Position numbers and translations under genes: made by a program
Notes under the pieces: generated by a model
What the model was told of the DNA's origin: nothing
Databases searched by the model: none
Seen by the model: the letters and a program-made list of their open reading frames with translations, nothing else
Shown: one piece after another, positions 35,469-64,000 of the stretch
Layout: each line of letters opens with the position of its first letter
Numbering within the stretch: position 1 is the stretch's first letter
NCBI RefSeq assembly: GCF_000143415.4
Contig: NW_003314373.1
Span: 62,001-126,000, forward strand
Source of the DNA: Selaginella moellendorffii
Lineage: Eukaryota > Plantae > Lycopodiophyta
DNA length: 64,000 nt
Direction of reading: 5' to 3'

Positions 35469-37267
35469 GATCTTGGAAGAACCCTAATTTCAGTGGGGGG
35501 AATGCCGCGATTTGAATAGATGTTGGCCATTAGCGTGTAGGCGGCAGCAAGGGTTCCATCCTCCTCGCTCCCAAGGCTCAGCTCCCGGATCGCATCAAAT
35601 GCGCGCCTCCCGATCGCTACATTCTTCCTGTTGTGACAGGCGCTGAGCACCGCCATCCAGATCGCGAGGCTCGGCGTGAGATTTCCAGGCATTCTTTCGA
35701 TCACGGCTATGGCTTCCTCGACCTGATTGGCACGGCTGAGGAGATCTACCAGGCAAGTGTAGTGCTCCATCCTCGGCGCGATCCCGTGCTGGACGCTCAT
35801 CACCCGGAAGAGATTCTTGGCTCGCTCGACGAGCCCCAATCGACTACACGCCGAGAGGAGCGATAGTAGCGTGATCTCGTCGGGGCGGATCGATTCCTGG
35901 AGCATCTGGCGGAAGAATCGAAAGGCGTGTTCTTCGCTGCCGACGCAATGGCTGTGCGCGGCGATGAGAGCACTCCAGGGGGCCATGTCTGGGCTAGAGA
36001 AAGCGTGAAACGCCAGCTCAGCTGCCACCGGGCAGCCACATCGGCCGTAGTGGCCAATCAGAGAGCAGGCCACTGCTGACTCAGCCTCCACGCCAGCGCG
36101 GCATACCAGAGAATGGACGACGCTCTTTCCTGGCTCGAGGAATCCACTGTTACTACAAGCCTTGATCGCAGCAATGAAAGTTCCAGCGTCTGGAGTGAAT
36201 CCTCGAGCTCTCATTTGATCCAAGAGCTCGATCGCAAGCTTGGGAGAAGCTCCAGCTTCCGCGATGCCCAAGGTCATCACGTTCCAGGAGACGAGAGTGT
36301 GGCGCTGCATCCTCTGGAAGATCGCCCGGGCTCTCTCCAGCTCCCCAGATTTCACGTAGAGATCGAGCAGACTGTTCTGGAGGAATTCGTCGTTGTCAAC
36401 TTCTGGAGTGGTGGTGATTTGCGCTGCTCTCGCTAGACACCAGGATCTAAGCTCTCGATCGGCGCTGTTCTTCTTCACAAGGCTGGAGCACGCATTGATA
36501 ACCGCGACGAAGGTCCGTGCGCTTGGAGAGATGGAGCTCTCTCGTTTGATCATTCGATCGAAGAGCTCGAGCGCAAATCTGGGCTGGTCGTTGTGGACGT
36601 AGCCGAGGATGATCGAATTCCACGAGACCAAGTCGGCTAGATTGTAGAGGAGGAGCCGATCAAACAGGCGCTGGGAATCGGGCATGCTTCCACATCTCGA
36701 GTAGCAATCTATCAGGCTGTTGGCGATGAAAACGTTGGATTCAAAGCCGGCATCCACGATCCAGGAGTGGAGAGCCATGGTTCTCTCAAGGGAAACGATC
36801 TTGATGACTAGTGCCCGGCCTTGGATCTCGATTTTCATCCCAGCTTCCCTCGCGGTGAGATCTTTGATCGCTTCCAGCACAGCGACGCAGCTCCTAGCAT
36901 TCATCGACGGCATTGCTGAGAACATCTCCAGAGCGATCTCGCCCTGGCCATTGCTCGCGTAGCCGCCGATGATCGTGTTCCAAGAAACGATGCTGTGGAT
37001 CTTGATCGCTTCAAACACGTCGCGAGCGTCGGCCATGCTTCCACTCTTGGCGTACATGTCGATGAGGCTGTTCGCGAGGATGAGCGCTGCCTTGGAGCTC
37101 TGGCGATCGCGCTGCTGGAGCAAGCGAGCGTGGATTGCCCTGCCGCGATGGAGATCCCTAGAGCGGCCGCAGGATTTCAGTGCCGCGACGATGGCCGCGG
37201 TTTCTTGCTCGGATGGGGAAAGATCTAGCGATGGGATTGCTGGAGAGCTAGAACAAGAATCCGCCAT
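35450..37267 (-). CDS. PLS-class PPR protein with E-like C-terminus
   Basis: 605-aa ORF with PLS repeats and EHYTCLVDLLSRA...W.AVLSAC. Confidence 0.92.
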   Translation of the reverse strand: MADSCSSSPAIPSLDLSPSEQETAAIVAALKSCGRSRDLHRGRAIHARLLQQRDRQSSKAALILANSLIDMYAKSGSMADARDVFEAIKIHSIVSWNTIIGGYASNGQGEIALEMFSAMPSMNARSCVAVLEAIKDLTAREAGMKIEIQGRALVIKIVSLERTMALHSWIVDAGFESNVFIANSLIDCYSRCGSMPDSQRLFDRLLLYNLADLVSWNSIILGYVHNDQPRFALELFDRMIKRESSISPSARTFVAVINACSSLVKKNSADRELRSWCLARAAQITTTPEVDNDEFLQNSLLDLYVKSGELERARAIFQRMQRHTLVSWNVMTLGIAEAGASPKLAIELLDQMRARGFTPDAGTFIAAIKACSNSGFLEPGKSVVHSLVCRAGVEAESAVACSLIGHYGRCGCPVAAELAFHAFSSPDMAPWSALIAAHSHCVGSEEHAFRFFRQMLQESIRPDEITLLSLLSACSRLGLVERAKNLFRVMSVQHGIAPRMEHYTCLVDLLSRANQVEEAIAVIERMPGNLTPSLAIWMAVLSACHNRKNVAIGRRAFDAIRELSLGSEEDGTLAAAYTLMANIYSNRGIPPTEIRVLPRSYDSSS

Positions 37268-37327
37268 AGCCTACCTCTCGCCGGCATTTCCCTCGAAATA
37301 TTTCTAGGGTTCTTGAGAGATTCCTCA

Positions 37328-39433
37328 ATGAGGCGGCTCCACGCGCGCCTCTCCAATGTCCTTCGATCCCGAGCGCATTCTTCTTCCCCCGCGATGGATC
37401 TTGCGCCATTACCAGCGCCAGCGCCATCGCTCCAACAGCAGCAGCAGCAGCATCAGGACGAGAAAATGGCCAGGTATTCCATCAATTCCAGGATCATCCT
37501 CGATCTCCTCAAGAATGCCAAGCGCGGCGAGAGCATGGACGAGATCATGAGACAGTGGAGCGGCTTGCTCACGACCTACGTCGTGGCGGATGTTCTCAAG
37601 CATCTCCCGAGCTCCGAGGCGGCTCTCCGGTTCTTCGAGTGGGCACCCAAGCGAATGGGCTACGAGCACAACGTCTTCACGTACAACAAGCTCCTCCTCC
37701 AGCTGACGAGAGAGCATCGCCACGACAAAGCCAGCGCCGTGTTCCAGGAGATGATCGACAAGTCCTGCCAGCCCGATGCCTTCACCTTTGCGATTCTCTT
37801 GCGGGGACTTTGCCGATCCAACCAGCTCGAGAAAGCTCGCCAGCTCCTGGGAAGAATGAAGGAGATGGGGTGCGTTCCAGACGATGCCATCTACAATGCT
37901 CTCATCTCCGGCTACTCCAAGGCCAAGGATTTCGGCCAAGCATTCAAGTTCCTGGCCGAGATGGTGAAGAACCATTGCCTTCCAACGGTGGTCACGTACA
38001 CGAACATCGTGGATGGGCTTTGCAAGGCCGGGCGGACCAAGGACGCGGTGAAGTTACTGGATGAGATGCGTGACAAGGGATGCTCTCCGAACATCTATAC
38101 TTACAACGTGATCGTGGAGGGGCTTTGCGAGGAGAGGAAGCTGGACGAGGCCAAGAAGATGCTCGAGGAGATGGCTGTGCGAGGATACTTTCCAGACGTC
38201 GTGACTTACAACTCGTTCATCAAGGGACTTTGCAAGTGCGACCGAGTGGACGAGGCACGAAAGTTTCTGGCGAGGATGCCTGTGACTCCCGACGTCGTGA
38301 GCTACACCACGGTGATTAACGGGCTTTGCAAGTCCGGGGATTTGGATTCAGCGAGCAGGATGCTGGATCAGATGACCAACCGTGGCTGCACTCCCGACGT
38401 TGTCACGTACTCCTCGTTGATAGACGGGTTTTGCAAAGGTGGCGAGGTGGAACGAGCCATGGGTCTTCTAGACTCGATGCTGAAGCTCGGGTGCCGGCCA
38501 AACATGGTAGCTTACAACTCGCTGCTCGGGGCTCTCCACAGGCTGGGACATATTGGCAAGGCTGAGGACATGCTAGTCGAGATGGAGAGGCGGGGATTTA
38601 CTCCAGACGTGGTTTCCTACAACGCTTGCATTGACGGGCTTTGCAAGGCGGAGCGAGTGAAGAAGGCCAAGGCCGTGTTTGACAGGATGGTGGAGAGGGG
38701 CTGTACGCCCAACGCCTCGAGCTACAGCATGTTGGTGGAGGAGCTTTGCAAGAAAAAGGAGCTTGACGATGCTATAACTCTGGTGGAACAAGCTCGCGAG
38801 AAATATCAGATTGTGGACATTCTTCTTTACACGGTGCTGCTGGACGGGCTTTGCAAAGGTGGTCGATTCGACGAAGCTTGTGCGCTGTTTAGCAAAGTTT
38901 TGGACGAGAAGATCTGCGAGCCGGACGTGTTCTTCTACAACGTTATGCTCGACAGTCACTGCAAGCGCAGGCAGATTGATAAAGCTCTCCAGATTCACAA
39001 GCAGATGCTAGAGAGGAACTGCTGCAACGTCGTCACCTGGAATATTTTGGTTCATGGACTGTGCGTGGACGACAGGCTCTCAGATGCGGAGACGATGCTT
39101 CTGACGATGGTGGACGAGGGATTTATTCCGGACTTCGTCACGTATGGGACACTAGTCGATGCTATGTGCAAATGCGGAAAATCTGCGGCCGCTCTAGAAC
39201 TGTTTGAGGAGGCAGTAAAAGGTGGATGTGTGCCGGATGTTGTCACCTACAGTGCTTTGATCACGGGGCTTGTCCACGAGAACATGGCCGAAGAAGCATA
39301 TCTGCTCTTCACGAAACTTGTCGAGCGACGCTGGGTGCCGGATGACAAAACGCTCGGCCTTCTTCACAGGAAGCTGAAGCTGTTGAACAAGCCAAGGAAG
39401 GCGGAGGTGGTGGACTTGTACTTGACCACTTGA
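37328..39433 (+). CDS. P-class PPR protein (probably mitochondrial)
   Basis: Tandem canonical 35-aa repeats (PDVVTY..LI.GLCK.G...A) and an Arg-rich N-terminus MRRLHARLSNVLRSRAHSS. Confidence 0.94.
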   Translation: MRRLHARLSNVLRSRAHSSSPAMDLAPLPAPAPSLQQQQQQHQDEKMARYSINSRIILDLLKNAKRGESMDEIMRQWSGLLTTYVVADVLKHLPSSEAALRFFEWAPKRMGYEHNVFTYNKLLLQLTREHRHDKASAVFQEMIDKSCQPDAFTFAILLRGLCRSNQLEKARQLLGRMKEMGCVPDDAIYNALISGYSKAKDFGQAFKFLAEMVKNHCLPTVVTYTNIVDGLCKAGRTKDAVKLLDEMRDKGCSPNIYTYNVIVEGLCEERKLDEAKKMLEEMAVRGYFPDVVTYNSFIKGLCKCDRVDEARKFLARMPVTPDVVSYTTVINGLCKSGDLDSASRMLDQMTNRGCTPDVVTYSSLIDGFCKGGEVERAMGLLDSMLKLGCRPNMVAYNSLLGALHRLGHIGKAEDMLVEMERRGFTPDVVSYNACIDGLCKAERVKKAKAVFDRMVERGCTPNASSYSMLVEELCKKKELDDAITLVEQAREKYQIVDILLYTVLLDGLCKGGRFDEACALFSKVLDEKICEPDVFFYNVMLDSHCKRRQIDKALQIHKQMLERNCCNVVTWNILVHGLCVDDRLSDAETMLLTMVDEGFIPDFVTYGTLVDAMCKCGKSAAALELFEEAVKGGCVPDVVTYSALITGLVHENMAEEAYLLFTKLVERRWVPDDKTLGLLHRKLKLLNKPRKAEVVDLYLTT

Positions 39434-39530
39434 CGAACAGGAGCTCTCGAATCCAAAACTGGTGAGTTTGATTGTTGTAACATTGTGAGTTTTCTTTGTT
39501 TTCCAACTCCTGCTTTCATTTCAGTGGGGG

Positions 39531-42329
39531 ATGGATGTCATGGCTGCGGCAACGTTCCTATCTGCCACAATCCAGGACTCTCAAGTGAGCAAGGCTCAAG
39601 AAGAGCTTCAATGGCGTCAATTGTTTGAAGACCCATCTCTATGGTGGGACAACAGGAACCACAACGTAAGTGCTTCTGTATTGTTTTCTTAGTTTTCATG
39701 GGATGGGTCTTTACTGCAGCTACATGGTTCGCAGCACGATTTCAAGCACGCACAATCAGGTGCCACGCTCACGATTGCTTCCTCGTTTTGTCCAAAATGG
39801 GCAAAGCTCGGCCTCAAGTGCTTGAAGGTTTCAAATTTCAAAGCCCGAGCACAGTACAGAGATGGTGAGGAGCCTATCTTTGAGAAGAAAACTCAGAGCA
39901 CTGACAGTGACGGTACCAGGCAGAGTAAAAGTCGCTCAAATCAACATCGCGAGAGCGTCTCCAGCCTAGTAGCCGCATTGAAAGCCTGCACTGGCTCGAG
40001 AAACTGGGCTCGGGGCATGAAACTTCATGCGGTTGCTGTGGAAAATGGAAAGGACTCCAACATCTTCGTGGCAAGCTCGTTGGTCGGCATGTACTCGAAG
40101 TGTGGACGCATGGAGGATGCCCGGAAGGTGTTTGACGGTATGCAGAAGCGGGATGCAGTGTCCTGGAACACTGTGATACTTGGCTATGCTGAAAATGGTG
40201 ACGGAGAAACAGCACTGGAACTCTTTGAGAAAATGCAAGCAGAAGACCATTTGTCACCGGACTCTTGGACGATTGTTTCTGCACTGAAAGCTTGCTCCAG
40301 CCTGGCTGCGGCAGAAAGATCAAGGGAAGTTTTTGGAGAGCTTGTGAAGATTCAGACTCTGGAGAAAGGAATGGCTGTTCACAGCTTGGCTTTGAAGAAC
40401 AGGTGTGACTCGGACAGATTTGTGGCCAGTGGCTTAGTGGACATGTATTCGAAGTGCGGAAGTCTATCATCTGCTCGGGCAGTCTTCGACGGTTTCTCCG
40501 ACAAGGACGTTGCTCTGTGGAACGCAATGATCCTTGGATACGCAGAAAATGGAAGTGGTGACCTCGGGTTGAAGCTGTTCGTGGAGCTGATAGAATCAGA
40601 TGTCGAGCCGAACGCTCGGACTTTCGTAGCAGCTCTCAAGGCCTGCACTGATCTTGCAGCGACAGAACAATCTAGAAAGTTTGATGGGACGCTTGTGAAA
40701 GCTAAAGCTCTGGAAGAAGGATTGGCCTTACATTCTCGGGCAGTGGAGAAACAGCTCGAAGCAGACATCTTCGTGAGCAACATGCTGGTCGATGTGTACG
40801 CGAAGTGCGGGAGCATGGCACTTTCGCGTGGAGTTTTTGACAGGATGCGGACTCACGACGTGATTTCGTGGACCGCACTGCTCTCAGGCTACTGTGACAA
40901 TGGTGAAGAGGAGGAGGCACTGGAGCTGATCTCAAGAATGCTGCAAGATCCTGGAAGGTGTTCTCCAAATGCTCGAACGTTTGTGGCAGCATTTAAGGCC
41001 TGTGCGAACTTGGCAGCAAAAGAAGATGCCCAGGTAGTCGCAGGAAAGCTGGTGAAGATGGTTTCACTGGAAAGAGGGACGGCTCTTCACGTTGAAGCAG
41101 CAAAGTCCGGCTTTGCCTCGGACCTTTTCGTGAGCAACACTCTGATCGACATGTACGCGAAGTGTGGTGCTCTTGAAGCTGGCCGCAGTGTTTTCGAGCG
41201 CATGAAAATCCGAGCTCCGGCATCTTACAACGCACTGATGCTGGGATACGTCGACAGTGGTGAGGCCGAAGAAGCTCTGGCGCTGTTCGAAAGAATGAGC
41301 TGCGAACCAGATGCGCGAACTTATGTGGCTGCTCTCAAGGCGTGCACCATCCTCGCATCCAGGGAACAGGGCAAAGAAATCAGTGGCAAGCTTGTCAAGG
41401 CGGAGTCACTTGGAAAGGCCAGAGGTCTTTTCGATCGGGCTGTGAAAGGTGGATTCTTTCCGGACTTGTTCGTGGCCAACACTCTGATCGACGTCTTCGC
41501 AAAGTGCGGCGACTTGGAAGAGGCTCGCAGGATCTTCTACTCGATGAAGCAGCGAGACGTGGTATCGTGGAACGTCTTGATGCTCGGCCTGGCCGAGAGA
41601 GACCAAGGCAAGCTAGCTCTCGAGCTCTTCGAGGAGATGAAGTCACAGGCTCAGTGTGATCCCGACTCCAGGACTTACGTCGCAGCTCTCAAGGCCTGTG
41701 CAAGCGTCGGGGCCTTAGAGATGGGACGAGCTCTCCACGAAGTCATCCGCGAGCTCGGCCTGGACGAGAGCGATGGGATCCTCGCAACCAGCCTGGTGGA
41801 TTTCTACAGCCGATGCGGGAGCATGAGTGAAGCTCGCGAGGTTTTCGACTCCATCAAAGCTCCCAAAGACGTGGTGGCTTGGAACTCGCTGCTCGCCGGC
41901 TATGGCAGGCAAGGTGGCGGAGACAATGCAACAGGCACGATGCTGGACGTGTTCTCGCAAATGCGAGAGCGAGGAGTGAAGCCAGTCGGGATCACTTACC
42001 TCTGCCTTCTCACGGCTTGCAGCCACGCCGGTTTGATCGACGAGGCACAGCGGCTCTTCGACGAGATGTGGAGTAAGAACGGGATCAAACCCGGGCTGGA
42101 GCACTACCACTGCTTGATCGATGCTCTGGGGCGAGCGAACCGGATCGAGGAAGCACTGGCTATGGCGGACAGGATGCCTCACGCTGCGAACTGCGTCACC
42201 TGGACGATGATCTTGAGCGCTTGCCACAAGTGGAAGAACTCGCGAGTGGGAAGGATCGCTTTCGACGCGCTCCAGCGGCTGGATTGCAAAGAATCCGCCG
42301 CATACGTGCTCATGGGCAACACATTGTAG
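39531..42329 (+). CDS. PLS-class PPR protein with an N-terminal OSB/PDF-like motif; exons 39531-39665 and 39720-42329
   Basis: A GTAAG...CTGCAG intron (39666-39719) joins WRQLFEDPSLWWDNRNHN to LHGSQHDFKHAQSGATL...CPKW. This is in frame with the 835-aa PPR ORF because 39822-39720 = 102 nt. Confidence 0.85.
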
Positions 42330-49075: not shown

Positions 49076-50891
49076 TGTAAGTGACTAAATTTTCTATTTT
49101 ACTTTAGTCACTTAATCGCACCTCCGACCACTTGGAGGAGTTTCACTCACAACTTTCGTAAGTCTTATTTTGGACTTGGGTTTACTAGCCCCGAGAATGG
49201 TATCCCCGCCACTCAACTTCATGCACTTGGTCTAAGTGCTCCACGTGTCTGATCCCATGACCGACATCCCAAGGTACCACTGACATATCAGCCTGTTACG
49301 TTAAGGCCATGCCCCTTTACCTTGGTCACACCAGTGGTCTAACACCACCTGCATCACAGTCCCATCTCTCAAGGACTGGGCCATCCGTCCATGAGTGATC
49401 ATTCCAGATCCACTCCGCATCCTTAGGATGCCCACAGACATGGGGAATAGCCTTCCCTAATATCCCTTTTCCGGTCTTCATCAAATCCCTTTTTGCCCAT
49501 GGCCGTATTTGCCAACACTACCACTAGATCGAGGCCCACAGGCCCGACCACTAAATCCCACGGTCCTCTGGGACTTCCTCACCACTTGACTGTATCCTTG
49601 GTCACTACACCAGAGGACTACTCCTCTTCCTTTCCACAGTCTGGGCCTTTGGGACAACATTTCGGAATACTGTGGCCTTACGCGAGCCCCGTGGGTACTC
49701 TCCCCACCTTCCGCCTTTAGGTGCTCTAGCCATGGGCTTAGAGCAAGGTTCCGTTGAGCCACACCAGGTATCCAAGTAGGTAGTGCCACCCACACTTGGA
49801 CTGGGAGCATCGGCCAGTCGATCTCTCGGGGGAATTAGAGCCGGCTCTTGAACACTTCACCAAGCTACCCCGCTTGTCGGTCCGTATTTACTTTAGTCTT
49901 GGACTTCCCAGTGGTCAATTCATCACCCAACATTGGGTTTGGCCTTCCTAGGCCAAACTGGCCTTTCCTGGCTAAACTGGCTCCACTGCAGTCCTCCCCC
50001 TTACTATACTTTTGGAGCTCACCAAACCTCCCAGGGTCTAGGAGACGAACGCTTTGGGCTTTCACCCTCTCAGACTCGAACTCGGACTCGGACTCGGACT
50101 TGGACTCGGACTCGGACTCGGACTCGGACTCGGACTCGGACTCGGACTCGGACTCGGACTCGGTCTCGGTCCCAATCTCGGTCTCGGTCTCGGTCTTGGT
50201 CCTGGTCTCGGTCTCGGTCTCGGTCTCGGTCCCAGTCTCGGTCTTAACCTCGGACTCCATCTCGGGTCCTTCTCGGACTCCATCTCGGATTCCATCTCGG
50301 GTCCATCTCGGACTCCATCTCAGTCCATCTCGGACTCCATCTCAGACTCCGTCTTGGTCCACCTCGGACTCCGTCTCGGTCTCCATCTCGGACTCCGTCT
50401 CGGTCCATCTCGGACTCCATCTCGGACTCCGTCTCAGTCCACCTCGGACTCCACCTCGGACTCCACCTCGGACTCCATCTCGGACTCCATATCGGACTCC
50501 GTCCTAGTCCACCTCGAACTCCATTTCGGACTCCGTCTCGGTCCATCTTGGACTCTATCTCAGACTTTGTCTCGGTCCACCTCGGACTCCACCTCGGACT
50601 CCACCTCGAACTCCATCTCAGACTCCATATCGGACTCTGTCTCGGTCCATCTCGGACTCCGTCTCGGAGTCAATCTTGGACACTTCCACGTGTCATGTGT
50701 TGGTCCTTTTTGGGTCCCTTTTTGGAGCCTTGCTTATTGGTTTCCTTGTGCTTGCTTCCACTCCCGCTCTCAACCTTCCAAGTCAGAGCTTTTAGTCCAA
50801 ACGTGTTATGCTTGTTTGGCTTTCGCTTCGGCCACTACCACATGGCGCCCTTCCGGCTCCACTTTGGGGCCTAGGGATTTTGTGTCTCACA
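49076..50891 (-). repeat. 3' LTR of the outer element
   Basis: TGTAAG...CTCACA termini; direct repeat of 55724-57486. Confidence 0.88.
50070..50670. repeat. LTR-internal tandem array: (GACTCG)n, then (GTCTCG)n, then degenerate CTCGGACTCCAT 12-mers and related 9-mers
   Basis: Read directly. It generates the spurious SE/GL/RT low-complexity ORFs. Confidence 0.95.
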
Positions 50892-52348: not shown

Positions 52349-53126
52349 TGTAAGCTCCTAAGTTTGGACTTCTCGGGAGGTCACCCAGCCCAATACTATT
52401 CAAACCCAAGGATGCTTAACCCCAAGTATCCCAAGACCCTTAACTGATTGGAAAAGGGGCCCTTTCCCTCTATATTTAAACCCCTATGGATCGTCTCTCG
52501 AATCGTTCCCTTTGGTTGCTTACAATCCACCACGCTTCCCTGCAAGTTCACGCCCTCGTGAACGGAAGCTGAGAGCCGTAGCTCTCCCGAGAGCCCCGCT
52601 CTCTTGACACCCTACCCCTTGGGTCGAGCCCAGTGGGAGCAAACTGGACCAACCAGATGTCAATCAACATGTGGTGTGATTCCCCTAATGTGGTGTGATT
52701 CCCCTAGCCAACCAACAGAGTCGGACCCAAGACCCTGCTCCGATACCAAATGTAAGCTCCTGAGTTTGGACTTCCCGGGAGGTCACCCAGCCCAGTACTA
52801 TTCAAACCCAGGGACGCTTAACCCCAAGTATCCCAAGACCTTTAACCGATTGGAAAAGGGGTGCACTCTTGTTCATGGGCCCTTTCCACCGATATATCAG
52901 CCTGTTACACTAAGGCCATGCCCCTTTACCTTGGGGTGTCGGTCATGGGATCGGACACGTGGAGCACTTGGATCAAGTGCAAAGGTTGAATGGCGGGAAT
53001 GCCATTCTCGGGGCTAGCAAGCCCAAGTCTGAAATAGGACTTATGGAGGTTGTGAGTGAGACTCCTCCAAGTGGTTGGAGGTGTGGTTAAGTGACTAAAG
53101 TAGAATGAAAAATTTAGTTGCTTACA
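52349..53126 (-). mobile_element. Cassandra-like TRIM (non-autonomous LTR element with 5S rRNA-derived LTR core) nested in the outer element
   Basis: LTRs 52349-52524 and 52751-53126 both run TGTAAGC...GCTTACA. The PBS is TGGTATCGGAGC (52748-52737), a PPT lies at ~52526-52540, and the non-coding interior is ~226 bp. Both LTRs contain a 5S-like core. The flanks TCGAA/TTAAA are a probable decayed TSD. Confidence 0.85.
52768..52823 (-). promoter_or_regulatory. 5S rRNA-like internal Pol III control region (A-box, IE, C-box) in the TRIM LTR; second copy ~52366-52421
   Basis: The minus strand reads GGTTAAGCGTCCCTGGGTTTGAATAGTACTGGGCTGGGTGACCTCCCGGGAAGTCC, compared with the plant 5S pattern AGTTAAGCG...TAGTACT.GGATGGGTGACCTCCCGGGAAGTCC. 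Confidence 0.85.
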
Positions 53127-55723: not shown

Positions 55724-57486
55724 TGTAAGTGACTAAATTTTCCATTTTGCTTTAGTCACTTAACCGCACCTCTAACCACTTGGAGGAGTCTCACTCACAA
55801 CCTCCGTAAGTCCTATTTTGGACTTGGGCTTACTAGCCCCGAGAATGGTATCCCCACCACTCAACTTCATGCACTTGGTCCAAGTGCTCCACGTGTCCGA
55901 TCCCATGACCGACATCCCAAGGTACCACCGACATATCAGCCCATTACGTTAAGGCCATGCCCCTTTACCTTGGTCACACCAGTGGTCTAACACCACCTGC
56001 ATCACAGTCCCATCTCTCAAGGACTGGGCCATCCGTCCATGAGTGATCATTCCAGATCCACTCCGCATCCTTAGAATGCCCACAGACATGGGGAATAGCC
56101 TTCCCCAATATCCCTTTTCCGGTCTTCACCAAATCCCTTTCTGCCCATGGCCGTATTTGCCAACACTACCACTAGATCGAGGCCCACAGGCCCGACCACT
56201 AAATCCCACGGTCCTCTGGGACTTCCTCACCACTTGACTGTATCCTTGGTCACTACACCAGAGGACTACTCCTCTTCCTTTCCACATTCTGGGCCTTTGG
56301 GACAACATTTCGGAACACCGTGGCCCTACACGAGCCCCGTGGGTACTCTCCCCACCTTCCGCCTTTAGGTGCTCTAGCCATGGGCTTAGAGCGAGGTTCC
56401 GTTGAGCCACACTAGGTATCCAAGTAGGTAGTGCCACCCACACTTGGACTGGGAGCATCAGCCAGTCGATCTCTCGGGGGAACTAGAGCCGGCTCTTGAA
56501 CACTTCACCAAGCTACCCTGCTTGTCGGTCCGTATTTACTCTAGTCTTGGACTTCCCAGTAGTCAGTTCATCACCCAACACTGGGTCTGGCTTTCCTGGG
56601 CCAAACTGGCCTTTTCTGGCCAAACTAGCTCCACTGCAGTCCTCCCCCTTACTATACTTTTGGAGCTCACCAAACCCCCCAGGGTCTGGGAGACGAACGC
56701 TTTGGGCTTTCACCCTCTGAGACTCAAACTTGGACTCGGACTCGGACTCGGCCTCGGCCTCGGTCTGGGTCCCGATCTCGGTCTCGGTCTTGGTCCTGGT
56801 CTCGGTCTCAGTCTCGGTCTCGGTCCCGGTCTCGGTCTTGACCTCGGACTCCATCTTGGGTCCTTCTCGGACTCCATCTCGGATTCCATCTCGGGTCCAT
56901 CTCGGACTCCATCTCAGTCCATCTTGGACTCCATCTCGGACTCCGTCTCGGTCCACCTCGGACTCCGTCTCGGTCCACCTCGGACTCCGTCTCGGTCCAT
57001 CTCGGACTCCGTCTTGGTCCACCTCGGACTCCACCTCGGACTCCATCTCGGACTCCATATCGGACTCCGTCCTGGTCCACCTCGGACTCCATTTTGGACT
57101 CCATCTCGGTCCATCTCGGACTCCATCTCGGACTCCATCTCAGACTCCATCTCGGTCCACCTTGGACTCCACCTCAGATTCCATCTCGGACTCTATCTCG
57201 GACTCCATATCGGACTTCGTCTCGGTCCATCTCGAACTCTGTCTCGGAGTCCATCTCGGACACTTCCACGTGTCATGTGTTGGTCCTTTTTGGGTCCCTT
57301 TTTGGAGCCTTGCTTATTGGTTTCCTTGTGCTCGCTCCTCGAGCACTTTGTTGGGAGTTCCACTCCCGCTCTCGACCTTCCAAGTCGGAGCTTTTAGTCC
57401 AAACGTGTTACACTCGTTTGGTTTTCGCTTCGGCCACTACCACATGGCACCCTTCCGGCTCCACTTTGGGGCCTAGGGATTTCACG
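55724..57486 (-). repeat. 5' LTR of the outer element, lacking its last ~7 nt
   Basis: Matches 49076-50884, then diverges before the TCTCACA terminus. It carries its own version of the GACTCG/CTCGGACTCCAT array (~56730-57260). Confidence 0.88.
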
Positions 57487-58555
57487 GAATAATCTCCACA
57501 CCCTATTTAAATTAATCCATAATGTTAATTCATTTAAAAAAGGTTTGCTTAAAATTTGTCAAGAGTAATAAGCCACTCTTCTTAATTCCACAGTTGTAAG
57601 GGCAAGGTTGGTTGTAAGTCAGAGGGTAAAACCACTGTGAAGCAGACAAACTACTCTGGAATTGACTATCACATGCTAAAGACCTTGCACTAAATTAATT
57701 TTAACCACATTAAGCACGAACAAAAAGGAAAAGTCCTCTTGCACACCTAGGTGGAGAGATTAAAGATTTATAACCCTTTACAGTCATGATAAAAGTTAAT
57801 TAGGGGAATTGAGGGGTAGACAAAATAAGAATGTTTACTAGCGATCCACTACACCTACTAAAAGATACATTTTGTTTATAGACCTAAAAAAAAGTTAATT
57901 GATTCCCACTCTATGTGACCAAATAATGTTATAACAAAGCAAAACTAAACTATCTTGTGTGCTTAATTAGGCCAACAAATGATAAATTTAATGAAATTGT
58001 TTAAACAATTTGACGAATTATCAAGCAAAATACTTAACAATATTCTACTCGAGATATACAGAAGTTTGACTCTTGGTACTTTTACTATTATCAAAGAAGG
58101 TGTAATAATACAGAAGCTCTATTTCGTTAAAGTGGGAATTGTCATTATCCCACTTGTAAAATAAGGTTTCCAAACCTTTATATAGTATATAAATATAACA
58201 AAATTCAACTGCATTGAGGCACATGCCATTTTATTTTAAACAAGGAAATGTCTACTCAATCACTTCTCCTCCCCCTGCCACTGCTTCACCTCTCTCTTCT
58301 CCTTGTCATCGTCGTCCAATTTCTTTCCATCCTTTTAATATTGGCTCAGTTGCTCCGAGTCTAGGTGGAGCCCAAGTCCCCATTCAATCTTTACTTTCCC
58401 CTTATTAATAAAACAACTTCGTAGACTTCCAATAACATGCTATAACACTTCTAGTATAATGCAAATCCTCTCAAAGAATTGTCTTTTAATATTAATACAA
58501 TGGCATGGAACCCCATGCCATAATAAGTTACATTTTTAAATAAATACATGCCATC

Positions 58556-59440
58556 TCAGACTGTTATTTTTTGCCTCCAACGCCTATACAATAATCTTGG
58601 AATTTCATCACTCTCCACACTATCAGGATTTAAACCCAATAGTAATGCCATCTCTTCTCTAATACGTCCACGCTCATGTTCAGTGGTCGAAGAACCCATC
58701 CGGTTGAGCAAATTATGGAGATGCGGATAGTGCTTGGCTAGACAATATACATGCCATAAATGATAACTGGTGTCTGTCCGATCAAATGGCTTCTGATATA
58801 CCGTTCCATCTGCCATTTGGTTGATTTCTGCAGCCACCTCCTGGACTGGCCAATTCTCTATCACCATCGCTCCAAGCCGTTTTGCAAGGTCCCCCAGAAC
58901 ATACGATTTCTTCTCCCTAGTTTCCATACTGCAAGAGATGGGGTGCACTGCATATGTGTGTGTGTTCGCTGCAGTTTTAATCGGTGAGTCATCAATGATG
59001 AGGATTTCACTTGACCTAGCAGTCCGGTTCATCACTACAGCCTCTGGCTTGACGAAGATGGGCTTGCTACCCCTCACATGGACCATAGTCAAGCAATCCT
59101 CCTGCGTTAGGAGAAAGTCAAATGGTAATATTACTCGCGTCTGATCGTGCATCATCTGTAGCAACGTTAATGCATTGTGGCACATCATGGATGTCCAAAC
59201 TCCCAATTGCAAATTGAACCCGGCCCTCTGTTTTAAGTGTCGCATGGTCATTATTAGATCCCGCAGTTTCTCCCGTGTGATTAATGTGAATCTGTCTCTT
59301 TTGACCAACTTGCGACCGCAGGCTTTGGAGGGTGCAGTGACATTCGAGGACGAGCTACGCTCATGGGAGAAAAGGACACTGTTCAGATAAAAAACGATAT
59401 AGTACTTTCGCCGTGACTCTGAAATGAAATGCGTCAGCAT
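58556..59440 (-). CDS. FCP1/NIF-like (HAD-fold) domain coding segment with a degenerate catalytic motif; possibly a 3' exon of the larger locus
   Basis: IVFYLNSVL (position of LDLNGVL), LGVWTS, LLTQEDC, KPIFVK, ILIIDDSPIK...N...AVHP. Confidence 0.6.
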   Translation of the reverse strand: MLTHFISESRRKYYIVFYLNSVLFSHERSSSSNVTAPSKACGRKLVKRDRFTLITREKLRDLIMTMRHLKQRAGFNLQLGVWTSMMCHNALTLLQMMHDQTRVILPFDFLLTQEDCLTMVHVRGSKPIFVKPEAVVMNRTARSSEILIIDDSPIKTAANTHTYAVHPISCSMETREKKSYVLGDLAKRLGAMVIENWPVQEVAAEINQMADGTVYQKPFDRTDTSYHLWHVYCLAKHYPHLHNLLNRMGSSTTEHERGRIREEMALLLGLNPDSVESDEIPRLLYRRWRQKITV

Positions 59441-60650
59441 AAAAAATGGTACAAGTCAATTTTACCATCTACAATATTAGCGAATGGTGCTCCCGATAGT
59501 TGTTCAGAGGGTTTTGGTCGAGGAAACGTGAAGGGCGGAAATACTCTCCTCTGCAATGTGGGGTCAATCGCATCCGATGGCGTGTGGGCACATGCCATTT
59601 CAGCTGTAAACTCTGGTACAACTGGCTCAATAGTGGCATGGGGTGGTTCCGATGGCGTGTGATCACACGCCATTTCAGCTGGTGCCTCCGTTGGCAAAGT
59701 GGACATGACCGAACAGGCAGCAGGGGCGGTGTAGGGAGGTTCCAACGGCACATAGTCAGACGATTGGGCACATGTTGAGTCCGTTGGAAATGAGGATACG
59801 ACCGGCTCGGCGGCTGGGGCGGCCTCATGCAGGTCCAATGGCACCTGGTCACCGTCAGTTGGATACGTGGACAAGATTGACTCAGTGGTATGGGCAGCAT
59901 CAAGTGGAGCGTGGTCAGCTTGCTTGGCGTTGATATGGATAGTAGCCTCCACCAGCTCTGATGACTCTTGCAAGCAAGTAGAGTCCACTGGCGGATCCAT
60001 ATGCATGTCCAAATATCTCCCTTCAATTGAGATGGTATCCTCCCTACTGGCTACTAAAAACAAACTCATTAGCACATTGAATCGACTATACTGTATTTAC
60101 CATCAACTGCTATTGAGGAACTAGGACCGATATCACTTGGGCGCACTGCTGATTCTGAAGGATTGGACATATGTTTCGACCCTTGCTTGGCACTATCCTT
60201 CCTTGACACTAAAGGCTAGAGTTTGTATCTTAATTCAACTGAATAATCTCTACTTACCATTTGCTCTGCGACCTATATGGACAATGTTAGAAATGGTAAA
60301 AGGTTAGGAATGGATGTACTATTATTTACCTGATGGTTTGTCTTGTATGACCTTCCTCCGCTGCTCTTTGGCCACCTCAAGCTGGCCATCGTCGTCATCA
60401 TCGTCGTCGTCGTTATTGTGATCATCACCATTGTGAGGACCATCCAAGTCCTCTTCGTCCTCCTCTTCTTTGTCCTCCTCTTCGTCCTTCTGCTCTTCCT
60501 ACTCATTATCTTTCTCTGGCTCTTCATCCCCCTCCTGCATTTCTTCTATAGGCTGCTCAGGCTGGATGGCTTGTTCTTCCAGGACCATCTTGGGAAAATC
60601 ATCTGTCCGAGTCTCCATCTCAAAATACAAGACATCCATAGCCTATTTTA
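59434..60650 (-). other. Low-complexity coding-like segments: Pro/Ala/Thr-rich repeats with a 75-bp tandem unit, and an acidic D/E tract with an in-frame stop
   Basis: AEMACDHTPSE/AEMACAHTPSD repeat (59572-59680) and GAG/GAC/GAT-rich codons on the minus strand at ~60380-60560. Confidence 0.5.
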
Positions 60651-63600
60651 GTGCGTGACTTAGGACCGTATCCTCACCCGACTGTCTTAACATGGTTTCT
60701 GCACGTTCTTGCACCCTTCGAAGACGACGAGATGAGAAAAACGTGGCCCTGACTTGAAAAGCATCCCTCATCCATTGTACCTCTCCATTGAGATTGGGGA
60801 AGGGGAGTCCGCCATAGGAATCTGAGTCAGGAGGTGGTGACCGCGAGGCATTACCTATCATCTTTTCGTTGCCCTTCTTCCTTTTCGAATCAAATGCCTC
60901 TAATCCCGACGACTGTCCAACATGCTTTCGCTTTTTATGACCACTGTCAGTTTGAGCTTGGCTGGTGCTTGCCTGTTTTGCCTTTGAAGAAGTGTCTCCT
61001 GCAAGGAATGGCATGAGACCACACGCCATTGCAAATATAATTTGTACCTCCTTTTTTCCTATTGCTTGTCTGTTTGTCCTTCTTCGACGCGCCACCAGTG
61101 TGCTTTTCAGTCCTTGTGTCTGAATATTCACAACGATCTATAATCAAAATGGTGTGAGGCCTCACGTGACCTTACCTTGTGCAGGTTGTGAGCTTGGCCC
61201 AACAGTAGCTGTTAACGCCGTTTCAGCATCTGGGGGTGGCCACGCTTATGCATACAGAGCTTGTGAGATAACATTTAAACTTAAAGTGCGTACTCACAAG
61301 GTTCGCAGAGAAGATACTGTTTTTCTTTGGCAACTGTAATTATATGCTTCATTGAAGTCACCTCTTCAATGGAGTTTGTCACCGCAACACACGGGACACC
61401 CTTGAGTAGTGCGGCTCGAAAGAATAATCCGCCGTAGTTGTACTCGACAACGCATTTGCCCTTGGAGTCGGAAGCAGGTGCTATTGCGTTGAAGACCCAG
61501 CTGAGCATTTCCCATGCTGCACCTGGAGCTTTCTCTAGATTCGAAAGCTCCATAGCCGTCTTCAGTTCCTCAGGCACGGGTAAATTGACCTCCCTCAGAT
61601 CAATTCAATCGGCCTTGTCGAACGAAGCTGGGAAGTCACTCCAGTCCCACTCTGCTGTAGGACCAATAACAAGGGCGAGTGTGAAGATGCGGACATTCGT
61701 CGGTATCTTCTTCTTAGCCATTATCCCATGGATCTCCTGCATCTCCTTGCCTTTCAACCGACCCTTCACCTCGTTCAAGGCCTTCCAGAACTTGTGATAG
61801 GATTCGGAGTCGTAGATCATATAGTGCACTGAAGATTCCACCTCCGCAAGTCCCACCATTAAGTCAATGATGGAGCTGACTTCGTCTGCATGAGTGATCT
61901 CCTCGTTTGTGAAGTTCATCACACAAAAGATGTTCTTGACCTGCTCATCTCCGCGGGAAACGATGCTCCTCCACCTTTGATCCTCATCCGAATTCACGTA
62001 TACCCGGTAAGGTTCTCGATAGGCCTCTGCTGCGGGGTCGAGCTGTTTCTGAAGCCGGCGGTCGACATCCCTCTTAATGAAATTTGGATACTGATTCAAC
62101 TTCTCAGCTTTACTTTTCGTGGCATCCCACAGCAGATCGATGAACTTGGGGGCCCCCTTCACGTAGTCGTCGATGTCTTCATTTGACGACTCCAGCTCTT
62201 CCATCATCTCTTGCGTGGTGTCGATGCTCACCCTCTCCACGGCCACTTGCTCAAAGATCCAATCCTTCAATAGCGCACGAGCTCTCAGAGTCGTGCACAA
62301 GTCCTCGTATGTCACAATATGGCTAGGAGTCATTTTGGTCTTGTTGAAGACTACCTCACCACGTAGAAGAACATTAGCCACTGTCAGAAGGTCATCGTCG
62401 TCTAAAGACCGCGAGAAATGCAAGGCGTTGAGCTTCAAATCATTGGGCTTCCGGCCGTCCTCCACACCCATTGAGTTTAGCAACTCCCCGTCATGGTACC
62501 TCCTCAGCACATCTACCCATTTTTCAAAAACAACTTTTGTCGCGAGTAAAATGTTATGGATGCTGAATGTGTCATTGACCCCCAGTGTTTTCGAGAGAAG
62601 ACTCGAGAATTCCTGCAATGGAAATGGCGTGAGGCCACATGCTATGCCACATGCAACGAGGCTTACCTGCCAGGCGCTAGTTGCTAGTGCACGTCCTTGT
62701 CCTGGTTTTTGTGGCTTCTTCAGTTGAACCCAGAGCTTCCGTGTTCATGCCAATGTCTCGTGCAGACCCGATTTGTAGCACGTTTCTTGCTTGACATTCT
62801 GTGCGTGGGAGATGGATATGATAGATCGGAGGGGCGAGTTGCCTTTTATCAGGCGGACAACTCTTATCTTGAAGACTTTCTTCACCTCCTCGCCCACCAT
62901 AATATCCACAACTATCTCTTGCATCGCCAAGCTAGAATGCTGCCTGGAGACGGCATAGAACCGGATGTTCTGATCGTCCAACACCTTCCTATTGATCAAG
63001 TCTGGAAACCTCGTCTCGCCCTTCATTGTTCGGTAGTAGGGGATCACGTCTGCGATGTCGGGTGTTACTGGACTTGCCAGCATCTTCTGCTTCAGTTTCT
63101 CCACCCACTCATCAGATACTAGCCTGTGGTTGTATTTGCTTTGGATGTCGATACGGCTCACGTCGATTGTATATACTTTGTTGGAATAGTAACAAGTACT
63201 ATTATCTGCGACGATTTTTGCTGCCTCTTCTTGCTCTTTCTGCTCTTTGCGGCTCTTCTTTTTGGTGGGTGTAGTGTTTGAACCCGAGGCAATGGCATCA
63301 CCAAGTAGCTTCTTTTTTGGAGCAAGAGAGTCGGACGTCGGCTTGAGCTTGACCACCCTTTTCTGCTTCGGGGTAGTTTCCAGATCGACCCCCTTCCCCT
63401 TCGCTTCGCGAACTGGAGGCACTCTCAACGGCTCAATGTTGGAATATAGTTTTTGAACATCGCCGTAGGTGAGGTCCGTGGATTCCATGTGATCTTCATA
63501 GACCCGCAGCGTCTTTGAAATTGTGGGCCTCCTGGACAACCTCTCCCTAGCTCCCTCTAGGAATTCCTCATAGCCGCTGCCCCCCTCTAGAAAGCCGCTA

Positions 63601-63845
63601 GGATGTGCAAGGTGGATCTTGAAGGCGGACGCTGTCTATACCACAAGTGCCAGTCCATATTCTTGCATGGAACTGCATGGAGTGTCTGTCACTTGGATGA
63701 GGATCCCCATGCATTCTTTTCTCCCACCATCTGTGTTGTACAGCCTCAGATCCTCGCCTTCCATCTCGAAAGTCCAACTGGTGAGCTCCTCCCCCTTCTT
63801 TGCATCCACATTGACAGTGGCTGGAAGAAGAACGCAATTCCTCGC
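60643..63845 (-). pseudogene. Multi-exon gene with a ParB/Srx-like region and a degenerate DNA amino-methylase-like C-terminal region; at least three in-frame stops; continues beyond the window
   Basis: ORFs 63636-63866, 62745-63539, 61605-62618 and 61281-61577 join in frame across single stops and one intron (62613-62666). Motifs are HRLVSDEWVEKLKQKM...FYAVSRQHSSLA and EKAP...WVFNAIAP...GKCVVEYNYGG.FFRAAL..G..CVAV. Confidence 0.6.
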
Positions 63846-64000
63846 CTGTTCAGAAATGCACAACAATTAGAGCTAACAGATGAAAAACTAGCAGCTGGAA
63901 ATAACGTGAGGCCACACGCCATTCACCACTGCATCAGATGTCTTGAGGCTGCATCCTAAGATGGCGTGAGGCTACACGCCATCTGTAACCGGACTGCACT

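What the first reader, a model, noticed from the sequence alone, without database searches (positions are those of the whole stretch)
58500..63982. A 22-bp palindrome repeated eight times across a ParB-like locus, mostly one per intron: candidate eukaryotic ParB/parS-like or self-marking mobile system
Seen in sequence: ATGGCATG-GAACCC-CATGCCAT (58500-58521), ATGGCGTG-TGGGCA-CATGCCAT (59577), ATGGCGTG-TGATCA-CACGCCAT (59652, a perfect 22-bp palindrome), ATGGCATG-AGACCA-CACGCCAT (61008), ATGGTGTG-AGGCCT-CACGTGAC (61149), ATGGCGTG-AGGCCA-CATGCTAT (62624), ATAACGTG-AGGCCA-CACGCCAT (63901) and ATGGCGTG-AGGCTA-CACGCCAT (63961). The 8-bp arms and the exact 6-bp spacer length are kept while the spacer sequence and flanks vary, and most arm changes are C>T or G>A. 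Five copies lie in predicted minus-strand introns: 60999-61047, 61120-61175, 62613-62666, ~63846-63926 and the intron ending ~63956. One copy lies just past the last stop codon. I saw no copy in the first 57 kb. Established: bacterial ParB dimers load on dispersed palindromic parS sites near their own gene. Inference: fixed arm-spacer-arm geometry points to a dimeric protein binding site, and the locus itself encodes a ParB-like and a methylase-like region. This may be a large mobile element that marks itself with binding sites placed in introns. Alternatives are splicing hairpins or tiny intron-generating insertions.
Basis: partly seen in the sequence, partly recalled or inferred. Interest (0 to 1): 0.88.

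Follow-up and report, generated by a model that had tools for sequence, protein, structure and literature searches.

The report
Gene-confined 22-bp palindrome repeat family
One decayed Selaginella gene of a rare, uncharacterised family carries eight or more copies of the same 22-bp palindrome in its short introns, one coding repeat and its 3' end; the repeat is real and confined to this gene, but a ParB/parS-like role is neither shown nor excluded.

Summary
All eight palindromes are at the stated coordinates. The motif gives 11 hits against 0.62 expected by chance. A profile finds significant copies only in 58.5-64 kb of about 107 kb of Selaginella DNA examined.

The window is Selaginella moellendorffii scaffold GL377677.1. 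The copies lie in one minus-strand gene (stop at 58556, runs off the window at 64000) that has at least three in-frame stops. The gene is collinear with rare, unnamed eukaryotic relatives.

Support for the domain labels is weak. 'ParB-like' rests on one DGQH-type motif with HMM E-values of 0.015 and 0.076. 'Methylase-like' rests on a motif-I-like segment, and the catalytic motif is degenerate.

Five of about ten short introns hold a copy. One of these introns is ancient and palindrome-free in two relatives, so the palindrome did not create it. The two exonic copies are in-frame 34-bp units. One of their arms is an old coding motif, so the palindrome probably arose inside the gene.

Three or four related loci have no palindrome of their own. 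Changes in the copies are mostly C>T-type decay.

Best reading (about 0.4): a home-grown short palindromic repeat copied in cis and kept where harmless. Protein-binding sites (about 0.25) and RNA exon-bracketing pairing (about 0.2) remain open.

The parts
58556..64000 (-). Decayed multi-exon gene that holds all copies. Stop codon at 58556-58558. The 5' end runs off the window.
   Evidence: One frame stays open from 63866 to 61284 apart from stops at 63636, 62745 and 61605. Spliced frames stay open further downstream. Collinear with L002, L007 and L008.
63639..63845 (-). Exon for the N-terminal domain ('TSWTFEMEG...'). Read by eye, it matches the N-terminus of L002 ORF1 ('SGWCFEVLE...').
   Evidence: The match is by eye only and was not scored.
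62748..63224 (-). The window reads IRFYAVSRQHS where relatives read IRFYIVDGQHT or FWIINGQHT.
   Evidence: Alignments A1, A3 and A5 have 13 invariant columns. phrog_1033 E=0.015 and DUF6551 E=0.076, both on relatives.
61284..62612 (-). Region called 'methylase-like'. A helical part is followed by a degenerate motif-IV position (NFTN) and a motif-I-like 'VVEYNYGG'.
   Evidence: tblastn against L002 E=8e-14 and against L001 E=1e-12. Alignment A2. L005 reads 'IDAFSGG'. No HMM hit.
58556..59440 (-). C-terminal 294-aa ORF with no detectable relatives.
63961..63982 (.). Palindrome copy with 8 of 8 stem pairs. Lies in the 44-nt intron 63956-63999.
63901..63922 (.). Palindrome copy in the 81-nt intron 63846-63926, 4 nt after the GT. 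Carries the flank CAGCTGGAA on the + strand.
62624..62645 (.). Palindrome copy in the 54-nt intron 62613-62666, 11 nt before the AG. This intron position is shared with two relatives whose introns have no palindrome.
61149..61170 (.). Most decayed copy (4 arm changes). Lies in the 56-nt intron 61120-61175, 5 nt after the GT.
61008..61029 (.). Palindrome copy in the 49-nt intron 60999-61047, 9 nt before the AG.
59648..59681 (.). 34-bp unit holding the perfect palindrome 59652-59673. In frame in a coding peptide repeat ('PAEMACDHTPSE').
59573..59606 (.). Second 34-bp unit holding palindrome 59577-59598. It matches the first at 31 of 34 bases, with unrelated flanks ('TAEMACAHTPSD').
59741..59788 (.). 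Older, interrupted version of the unit in the neighbouring peptide repeat. It has the same TGGGCA centre plus CATG, with a 13-nt interruption.
   Evidence: The homology is inferred.
59836..59857 (.). Half unit in a further peptide repeat (TCCA-ATGGCACC-TGGTCA). There is no second arm.
   Evidence: Inference.
58500..58521 (.). Palindrome copy 34 nt past the stop codon. It has 8 of 8 stem pairs, through CpG changes on both arms.
58208..58229 (.). Degenerate copy with 3 mismatches, about 330 nt past the stop codon.
   Evidence: E=0.68, so weak.
58544..58554 (.). Half site ATACATGCCAT just past the stop codon. The same 11-mer recurs at 58747-58757, inside the last exon.
61048..61119 (-). 72-nt lysine-rich exon bracketed by the copies at 61149 and 61008. 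A 29-nt exon at 63927-63955 is bracketed the same way by 63961 and 63901.
   Evidence: The RNA minimum-energy folds pair the bracketing copies across each exon.
60054..60329 (-). Three short introns without a palindrome (60273-60329, 60209-60257, 60054-60100). Two more lie at 61230-61297 and about 59414-59464.
   Evidence: Removing them gives one open frame from 60498 to 59437. No significant match to the unit.

Best explanation
The palindromes are members of one short repeat family that arose inside this gene and was copied only within it. They are not an imported element, and they are not sites that evolved separately.

Shown:
- The core is a near-perfect 22-bp dyad.
- Similarity between copies ends sharply after 22-34 bp.
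- The host gene is a decayed member of a rare eukaryotic family.
- At least one host intron is far older than its palindrome.
- About 100 kb of other Selaginella DNA holds no copy.

Inferred:
- One arm (ATGGCRYx on the + strand) is the antisense of the codons for (V/T)P(L/S)(D/E). All four peptide repeats of the exon at 59.5-59.9 kb carry these codons. The dyad was therefore probably created there by a small inverted duplication.
- A 22-34-bp unit was then copied in cis, in both orientations and without target-site duplications. It landed in existing short introns and the 3' UTR.
- The likely copying route is a hairpin-driven process: template switching, templated repair synthesis or short-tract conversion. 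This resembles how short palindromic repeats spread in organelle and bacterial genomes.
- Copies survive only where a foldable 22-bp insert does no harm: short introns, a disordered coding repeat where the unit is 12 codons, and the UTR.
- The copies are now decaying by C>T changes, together with the silenced gene.
For: - Clustering and restriction to the locus. The exact consensus is absent from metagenome, viral and prokaryotic collections.
- In the five upstream copies the centre is as well conserved as the arms. Four of them share the asymmetric AGGCCA centre in one orientation. This points to descent by copying, not convergence on a binding consensus.
- Unit borders vary. The exon units span 34 bp. 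Copy 63901 carries the same CAGCTG(G)AA flank, inverted. Other copies have bare 22-mers.
- I saw no target-site duplications in the flanks.
- Older, interrupted or half versions sit in the neighbouring peptide repeats, and the arm doubles as a coding motif.
- The intron at 62613-62666 shares its position with palindrome-free introns in the L001 and L002 genes.
- Relatives have no palindromes of their own.
- Decay is of the methylation type. 10 of 12 arm changes are C>T or G>A. CpG observed/expected is 0.71, against 0.97 in the neighbouring PPR genes. The three stops are TAG, TGA and TGA.
- Non-CpG divergence of the five upstream copies is 9 of 90 positions by my count. The three stops imply about 2.7% neutral decay of the coding frame. 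This argues against strong constraint on the copies.
Against: - No known plant nuclear mechanism places the same roughly 30-bp unit six to eight times in one 6-kb gene. Under pure neutrality that rate is implausibly high, so some driver is needed: selection, or an enzyme that recognises the hairpin.
- In the three downstream copies the arms are much better kept than the centre (3/48 against 9/18, p=2e-4). That is what recognition of the arms would predict.
- The direction from exon to intron rests on short similarities (a shared 10-mer plus in-register motifs).
- The genome-wide distribution is unknown. Only about 0.1% of the genome was seen.
- The sequence upstream of 64000 and the second haplotype could not be fetched.
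Confidence: 0.4

Rival explanations
1. The palindromes are cis-acting DNA sites read by a symmetric dimeric protein, possibly the gene's own DGQH-type ParB-fold product. This follows the logic of DndB binding at its own promoter, ParB at parS, or papillomavirus E2 at ACCG-N4-CGGT. The sites sit in introns and the UTR because those are the only non-coding positions inside a compact unit.
For: - The dyad symmetry runs through the centre (GGCC or GATC cores), the geometry is a fixed 8-6-8, and no copy has an indel.
- In the three downstream copies the arms are kept while the centre diverges (p=2e-4).
- Enrichment in a single gene is extreme, which is easier to explain with selection.
- The gene family carries a DGQH motif with weak ParB-type HMM hints.
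- A DGQHR protein, DndB, binds fixed-spacer palindromes at its own gene (PMC4507180).
- ParB-fold and N6/N4-methylase fusions are common in prophages (PMC12704722).
Against: - No ParB, HTH or methylase HMM reaches significance. The structure models were unusable and the fold search had no hit below E=0.8.
- The window's own motif is SRQHS and the gene has stop codons.
- Relatives have no palindromes of their own.
- The upstream copies show no contrast between arms and spacer, and about 10% non-CpG divergence.
- I saw no ParA-like partner in the ORFs I examined.
Confidence: 0.25
2. The palindromes act in the pre-mRNA. Because every copy is complementary to every other copy, copies in adjacent introns can pair with each other. 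This would loop out the small exon between them and so regulate skipping or back-splicing. A single copy would fold into an 8-bp hairpin that a short intron can tolerate.
For: - All copies lie within the transcribed unit.
- Four of the five intronic copies form two pairs that bracket very small exons, of 29 nt and of 72 nt. The 72-nt exon is lysine-rich and frame-preserving.
- The minimum-energy folds pair the two copies across each exon, with z=-3.0 and z=-1.6.
- Three copies sit 5-11 nt before the 3' splice site, where only a looped-out structure would be tolerated.
Against: - Decay shows no bias towards the sense strand. By my count from the sequences, 58 of 64 stem pairs hold on the sense strand and 59 of 64 on the antisense strand.
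- Folds of most single introns are no better than shuffled sequence.
- Copies also lie in an exon and in the UTR.
- A 15-nt exon is not bracketed.
- There is no Rfam match.
- The centroid fold of the first pair shows local hairpins instead.
Confidence: 0.2
3. The palindromes are an imported miniature mobile element. This could be an ultra-short MITE, an introner-like element, or a REP/IS200-type hairpin element that hopped locally.
For: - The arms resemble terminal inverted repeats, the units are discrete, and both orientations occur.
- Introner and symmetric-intron elements with inverted repeats are known (PMC7789003; PMC8469720, read only as title and abstract).
Against: - There are no target-site duplications and no shared target sequence.
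- At 22-34 bp the unit is far below known MITE sizes.
- No transposase or HUH domain was found.
- No copy was found in about 100 kb elsewhere.
- One arm is an old coding motif of the host gene.
- One host intron predates its palindrome.
Confidence: 0.1
4. The pattern is chance or a composition artefact.
For: None.
Against: - 11 hits against 0.62 expected, and 0 of 100 shuffles reached that count.
- Profile E-values run from 1e-6 to 7e-4 for all eight copies.
Confidence: 0.01

Closest known systems
Bacterial ParB-parS partition systems
   Same: Short palindromic sites cluster around the gene of a putatively ParB-fold protein, and the geometry suits a dimer.
   Different: No ParB HMM hit, no box II arginine (DGQHT or SRQHS instead of GxxR), no HTH and no ParA partner were found. 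The sites are spread through introns of a eukaryotic nuclear gene, the gene is decayed, and relatives lack such sites.
DndB, a DGQHR-motif regulator binding 5'-TACG-N10-CGTA-3' at its own promoter (PMC4507180)
   Same: It has a DGQH-type motif, palindromes with a fixed spacer, and sites at its own gene.
   Different: DndB has two promoter sites. Here there are eight or more copies inside the transcription unit. Homology to DndB is not demonstrated, and binding is untested.
Phage and prophage ParB-fold plus N6/N4-methylase fusion proteins (PMC12704722)
   Same: The order of parts is the same: a ParB-type motif first, then a region with the motif IV position ahead of a motif-I-like segment.
   Different: No HMM-level similarity. 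The catalytic motif is degenerate in every family member. The gene is eukaryotic, with spliceosomal introns.
Short palindromic repeats that proliferate in organelle and bacterial genomes (organelle palindromic repeats, Rickettsia palindromic elements, REP). Cited from my own knowledge, not checked here.
   Same: These are hairpin-forming units of tens of bases with no coding capacity of their own. They are found in introns and even in frame within genes, and how they spread is unclear.
   Different: Those families spread across a whole small genome. This one is confined to a single nuclear gene and appears to derive from that gene's own coding repeat.
Introner elements and internally symmetric introns (PMC7789003; PMC8469720)
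   Same: Repeated inverted-repeat sequence lies inside short introns, and hairpins sit close to splice sites.
   Different: Those elements create introns and occur genome-wide in many genes. Here only the 22-bp core is shared between introns. At least one intron predates its palindrome, and copies also lie in an exon and the UTR.
Complementary intronic elements that loop out exons, such as inverted repeats flanking circularised or skipped exons. Cited from my own knowledge.
   Same: Pairs of mutually complementary elements lie in the two introns flanking a small exon.
   Different: The elements here are only 22 nt and each is self-complementary. There is no expression evidence.

Membership tests
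ParB/parS partition system | ParB N-terminal (CTPase) domain recognised by family models, with the box II GxxRxxA arginine | tested here: inconclusive
   No Pfam or NCBIfam hit. phrog_1033 'ParB-like partition protein' scores E=0.015 on relative L002. DUF6551 scores E=0.076 on relative L007 at the same motif. The motif reads (D/N)GQHT in relatives and SRQHS in the window.
ParB/parS partition system | Helix-turn-helix DNA-binding domain and a C-terminal dimerisation domain | tested here: inconclusive
   No HMM hit. The AlphaFold models were too poor to judge, with pLDDT of 34 and 43. The fold search had no hit below E=0.8.
ParB/parS partition system | ParA-type ATPase partner encoded alongside | tested here: not met
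   No such ORF or domain in 56-64 kb or among the large ORFs of the window. Sequence beyond 64000 was not seen.
ParB/parS partition system | Specific, CTP-dependent loading of the protein on the palindromes | not testable with these tools
   Needs EMSA, DAP-seq or ChIP.
N6/N4 DNA methyltransferase (beta class) | Catalytic motif IV (D/N/S)PP(Y/F/W) | tested here: not met
   The aligned position reads NFTN in the window, ADLR in P0003, LDAT in P0014 and CDSA in P0006. The alignment is shallow.
N6/N4 DNA methyltransferase (beta class) | AdoMet-binding motif I (FxGxG) and recognition by family models | tested here: inconclusive
   Motif-I-like segments are present: VVEYNYGG, IVEYGCGG, VIDINTGG, IDAFSGG. 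No Pfam, NCBIfam, PHROG or PDB hit.
Introner / intron-generating element | The element's insertion creates the intron | tested here: not met
   The intron at 62613-62666 sits at the same W-[QK] | [ES]-F position as palindrome-free introns in the L001 and L002 genes. The other four introns could not be tested.
Introner / intron-generating element | Many near-identical whole introns in many genes | not testable with these tools
   No access to the whole genome. Within this gene only the 22-bp core is shared.
MITE / TIR transposon | Target-site duplications flanking terminal inverted repeats | tested here: not met
   The flanks of all eight copies show no direct repeat.
Hairpin elements moved by HUH enzymes (REP/RAYT, IS200/IS605, Helitron ends) | An HUH/Y1 or Rep-helicase gene in cis or in trans | tested here: inconclusive
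   No such domain in the locus ORFs. The rest of the genome was not seen.
Known structured RNA families (Rfam) | Match to a covariance model | tested here: not met
   The only match is a chance-level snoRNA hit at E=0.72, away from the palindromes.

The most novel reading that the evidence does not exclude
This is a eukaryotic nuclear gene family descended from phage-type ParB-fold/methylase fusions. In Selaginella it acquired its own dispersed palindromic loading or recognition sites inside its introns. That would make it a eukaryotic counterpart of ParB-parS or DndB-type self-recognition, possibly belonging to a selfish element whose ends lie outside the window.
Probability: 0.12. Interest if true: 0.85.

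Novelty: new variant of a known kind. Interest (0 to 1): 0.45.

Why it matters
- If the best reading is right, this is a rare nuclear example of a short palindromic repeat born from a gene's own coding sequence and then copied into that gene's introns. It would be a small natural case study of how hairpin-forming DNA spreads in cis, and of how much foreign structure a 44-56-nt intron can carry.
- If either functional rival is right, it would be more notable. One option is a eukaryotic protein with a ParB/DndB-type motif that has its own fixed-geometry sites. The other is a minimal, self-complementary element that loops out micro-exons.
- The work also exposes an unnamed, patchily distributed eukaryotic protein family. 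It has a DGQH motif region, a methylase-like region and an ancient conserved intron. One intact stand-alone paralogue exists in S. moellendorffii (LOC9650508).

Tried and rejected
Domain and family searches that gave nothing significant:
- Pfam, NCBIfam, PHROGs and PADLOC on all pieces and relatives, apart from the two weak hints reported.
- PDB sequence searches with single pieces and with profiles.
- tblastn against phage records.

Homologue searches:
- Word-based searches with the 337-aa and 294-aa pieces found no hits.
- A full HMMER scan of 1.8 billion representatives found only four distant real relatives, plus one repeat-driven hit to an RTX protein that I discounted.

Structure:
- Two AlphaFold runs gave pLDDT of 34 and 43, too poor to use.
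- Foldseek had no hit below E=0.8. SspE, sulfiredoxin and ParB chains appear only within the noise.

Collection scans:
- The 22-mer consensus gave zero hits in metagenome, viral and prokaryotic collections.
- Searches for related loci in prokaryotic and viral collections found none.
- The one metagenome hit, L006, is marginal and matched no other family member.

Other checks:
- Rfam gave nothing relevant.
- A possible ninth intronic copy in intron 61230-61297 is not significant (220 of 2000 shuffles).
- The 75-bp spacing of the exonic copies is not a 75-bp tandem duplication. Only 34 bp are shared.

Not possible with these tools:
- I could not reach the sequence beyond 64000 or the allelic haplotype. 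Look-ups need an exact protein, and no called gene lies close enough.

Ideas rejected:
- Excision footprints, because all copies share one sequence.
- MITEs collapsed to TIR-TIR remnants, because the spacer is always 6 bp.
- Helitron 3' ends, because only one copy is followed by CTAG.

Full report
**Where the window comes from.** A PPR protein encoded at 35450-37267 is on record. It clusters with a Selaginella moellendorffii protein. Its contig is GL377677.1, and the window corresponds to bases 62001-126000 of that record. The other large ORFs are plant-type PPR genes and a B-lectin receptor kinase.

**The observation.**
- All eight palindromes are at the stated coordinates.
- The pattern ATGGCRTG-N6-CAYGCCAT, with up to three mismatches, gives 11 hits against 0.62 expected. 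No shuffle reached 11.
- A profile built from the eight copies recovers all of them at E between 1e-6 and 7e-4. It finds nothing else significant in the window, in L001 (21 kb around a paralogue) or in L003 (22 kb of the other haplotype).
- Weaker relics exist:
  - a degenerate copy at 58208;
  - two ATACATGCCAT half sites at 58544 and 58747;
  - older versions in the coding repeat.
- The exact consensus is absent from the metagenome, viral and prokaryotic collections.

**The host gene.**
- On the minus strand, one frame stays open from 63866 to 61284 apart from three stop codons.
- Removing short GT-AG introns keeps the frame open further downstream.
- The gene ends at 58556 and runs off the window at 64000.
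- No Pfam family matches any piece.
- A scan of 1.8 billion protein representatives with the 337-aa piece found only distant relatives:
  - an intact stand-alone S. moellendorffii paralogue, LOC9650508 (P0003, 25% identity);
  - unnamed proteins from metagenome and SRA assemblies.
- The contigs of those relatives (L002, L007, L008) have the same two-part layout as the window. An upstream part ends in a DGQH-type motif region, a conserved intron follows, and then comes the part matched by the 337-aa piece.

**The domain labels.**
- 'ParB-like' rests on one motif. Relatives read IRFYIVDGQHT or FWIINGQHT. The window reads IRFYAVSRQHS.
- Two weak HMM hints fall at that motif: phrog_1033 'ParB-like partition protein' at E=0.015 and Pfam DUF6551 at E=0.076.
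- Everything else was negative or unusable: Pfam ParBc, NCBIfam, PADLOC, PDB sequence and profile searches, two AlphaFold models and Foldseek.
- 'Methylase-like' rests on a C-terminal motif-I-like segment (IDAFSGG, VVEYNYGG). The position where DPPY would sit is degenerate in every member. If this is a methylase fold, it is probably inactive.
- The order of parts resembles prophage ParB-fold/N6-N4 methylase fusions (PMC12704722). That is a resemblance, not a demonstrated membership.
- Nothing marks the locus as a mobile element.

**Anatomy of the repeat.** About ten short introns can be inferred.
- Five hold a copy: 63956-63999, 63846-63926, 62613-62666, 61120-61175 and 60999-61047.
- Five do not: 61230-61297, 60273-60329, 60209-60257, 60054-60100 and about 59414-59464.
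- The palindrome fills 27-50% of each host intron.
- Three copies end 5-11 nt before the 3' splice site. Two begin 4-5 nt after the GT.

**The intron at 62613-62666 is ancient.**
- The paralogue gene in L001 has an intron at the same W-[QK] | [ES]-F position, and so does the distant relative in L002. Neither intron holds a palindrome.
- The palindrome therefore entered an existing intron. 'Intron-generating insertion' fails where it can be tested.

**Descent by copying.**
- In the five upstream copies the 6-bp centre is as well conserved as the arms: 3/30 changes against 9/80.
- Four of them share the asymmetric centre AGGCCA in the same orientation.
- These copies descend from one sequence. 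They did not converge on an arm-only consensus.
- The three downstream copies behave differently. Their arms are kept (3/48) while the centre has diverged (9/18, p=2e-4).
- Ten of twelve arm changes are C>T or G>A, and six are at the CpG.
- The locus has CpG observed/expected of 0.71, against 0.97 in the neighbouring PPR genes. The three stops are TAG, TGA and TGA (read).
- The locus therefore looks like silenced, methylated DNA in decay.

**A likely birthplace.**
- The two exonic copies are not a 75-bp tandem duplication.
- They are two copies of a 34-bp unit, identical at 31 of 34 bases, with unrelated flanks.
- Each unit reads in frame as 12 codons, xAEMAC(A/D)HTPS(D/E).
- They lie in a run of four degenerate peptide repeats.
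- All four repeats carry the codons for (V/T)P(L/S)(D/E). The antisense of those codons is the + strand arm plus its TCCR flank.
- One neighbouring repeat keeps the TGGGCA centre and CATG but is interrupted by 13 nt. Another keeps one arm and a centre but has no second arm.
- My inference is that the dyad arose here by a small inverted duplication of a coding motif.
- The intronic copy at 63901 carries the exon unit's CAGCTG(G)AA flank in inverted orientation. This suggests copying from exon to intron.
- These similarities are short, so the direction is a hypothesis.

**What it most likely is.** I favour, at about 0.4, a home-grown short palindromic repeat that was copied in cis by a hairpin-driven process and kept only at harmless positions.
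- In favour:
  - an endogenous origin;
  - variable unit borders;
  - both orientations;
  - no target-site duplications;
  - no analogous palindromes in L001, L002, L005, L007 or L008;
  - divergence that exceeds the decay of the coding frame.
- Main weakness: the number of events in one gene is implausibly high for a neutral process, so a driver is needed.
- Two functional readings therefore stay open.
- DNA sites for a dimeric protein (about 0.25). DndB is the closest documented analogue: a DGQHR protein that binds TACG-N10-CGTA at its own gene (PMC4507180).
  - RNA-level pairing (about 0.2). Four of the five intronic copies form two pairs that bracket a 29-nt exon and a 72-nt lysine-rich exon. 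The minimum-energy folds pair the two copies across each exon, with z of -3.0 and -1.6. Stem decay shows no sense-strand bias (my count), and single-intron folds are mostly unremarkable.
- An imported mini-transposon is unlikely (about 0.1).
- Chance is excluded.

**Verdict.**
The palindromes, their intron placement and a loosely ParB/methylase-like architecture hold.
- The decisive data could not be reached with these tools: a whole-genome motif scan, the allelic haplotype, other Selaginella species, RNA-seq and binding assays.

Noticed in passing
window 50000-50880 and 56648-57482: Two blocks of 12-, 22- and 34-nt periodic satellite-like repeats lie 6.6 kb apart as direct repeats (85-94% identical). 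The arrangement could be LTR-like or a segmental duplication. No long ORF lies between them.
   Followed up: no
window 52927-53126 and 55724-55924; L001 8486-8587: An inverted-repeat element has roughly 200-bp arms (89-96% complementary) about 2.6 kb apart. About 100 bp of the arm is 82% identical to a stretch near the paralogue gene on another scaffold, so this is a dispersed TIR-type element.
   Followed up: partly
L001 10001-11425 (S. moellendorffii GL377575.1): An intact, annotated stand-alone paralogue (LOC9650508, 451 aa) has only the methylase-like part, with no DGQH-motif part upstream. It keeps the ancient intron and has no palindrome. It may be a domesticated remnant of the family.
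   Followed up: partly
window 62613-62666; L001 about 10115-10183; L002 about 1709-1794: An intron directly after a conserved W-[QK] is shared by the Selaginella gene, its paralogue and a distant eukaryotic relative. The L007 ORF also ends at ...EEWK. The family is therefore old in eukaryotes, not a recent transfer.
   Followed up: yes
window 62625-62654: Inside the 54-nt intron the 9-mer GCATGTGGC (sense strand) occurs twice, 12 nt apart. This looks like a micro-duplication that overlaps one arm of the palindrome.
   Followed up: no
L005 3318-3941; L007 has the same gene order: In the SRA-derived relatives, a SET-domain ORF (Pfam SET, E=4e-5) lies about 1.5 kb downstream of the family member, on the same strand. 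I do not know whether it belongs to the same gene.
   Followed up: no
window 58556-59440 (minus strand): The C-terminal 294-aa ORF is the longest intact piece of the gene, and no search found a relative. It contains an H-L-H triplet followed about 47 residues later by a tyrosine. That spacing recalls HUH/Y1 enzymes, but no model supports the idea and it may be chance.
   Followed up: no
window 60330-60500 (minus strand): A strongly acidic low-complexity stretch (runs of D and E) carries a further in-frame stop near 60500. The gene therefore has more than the three stops seen in its 5' half.
   Followed up: no
window 33441-42329: Four intronless PPR genes lie on alternating strands. The allelic haplotype (L003) has differently sized gene models for the same genes.
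   Followed up: no
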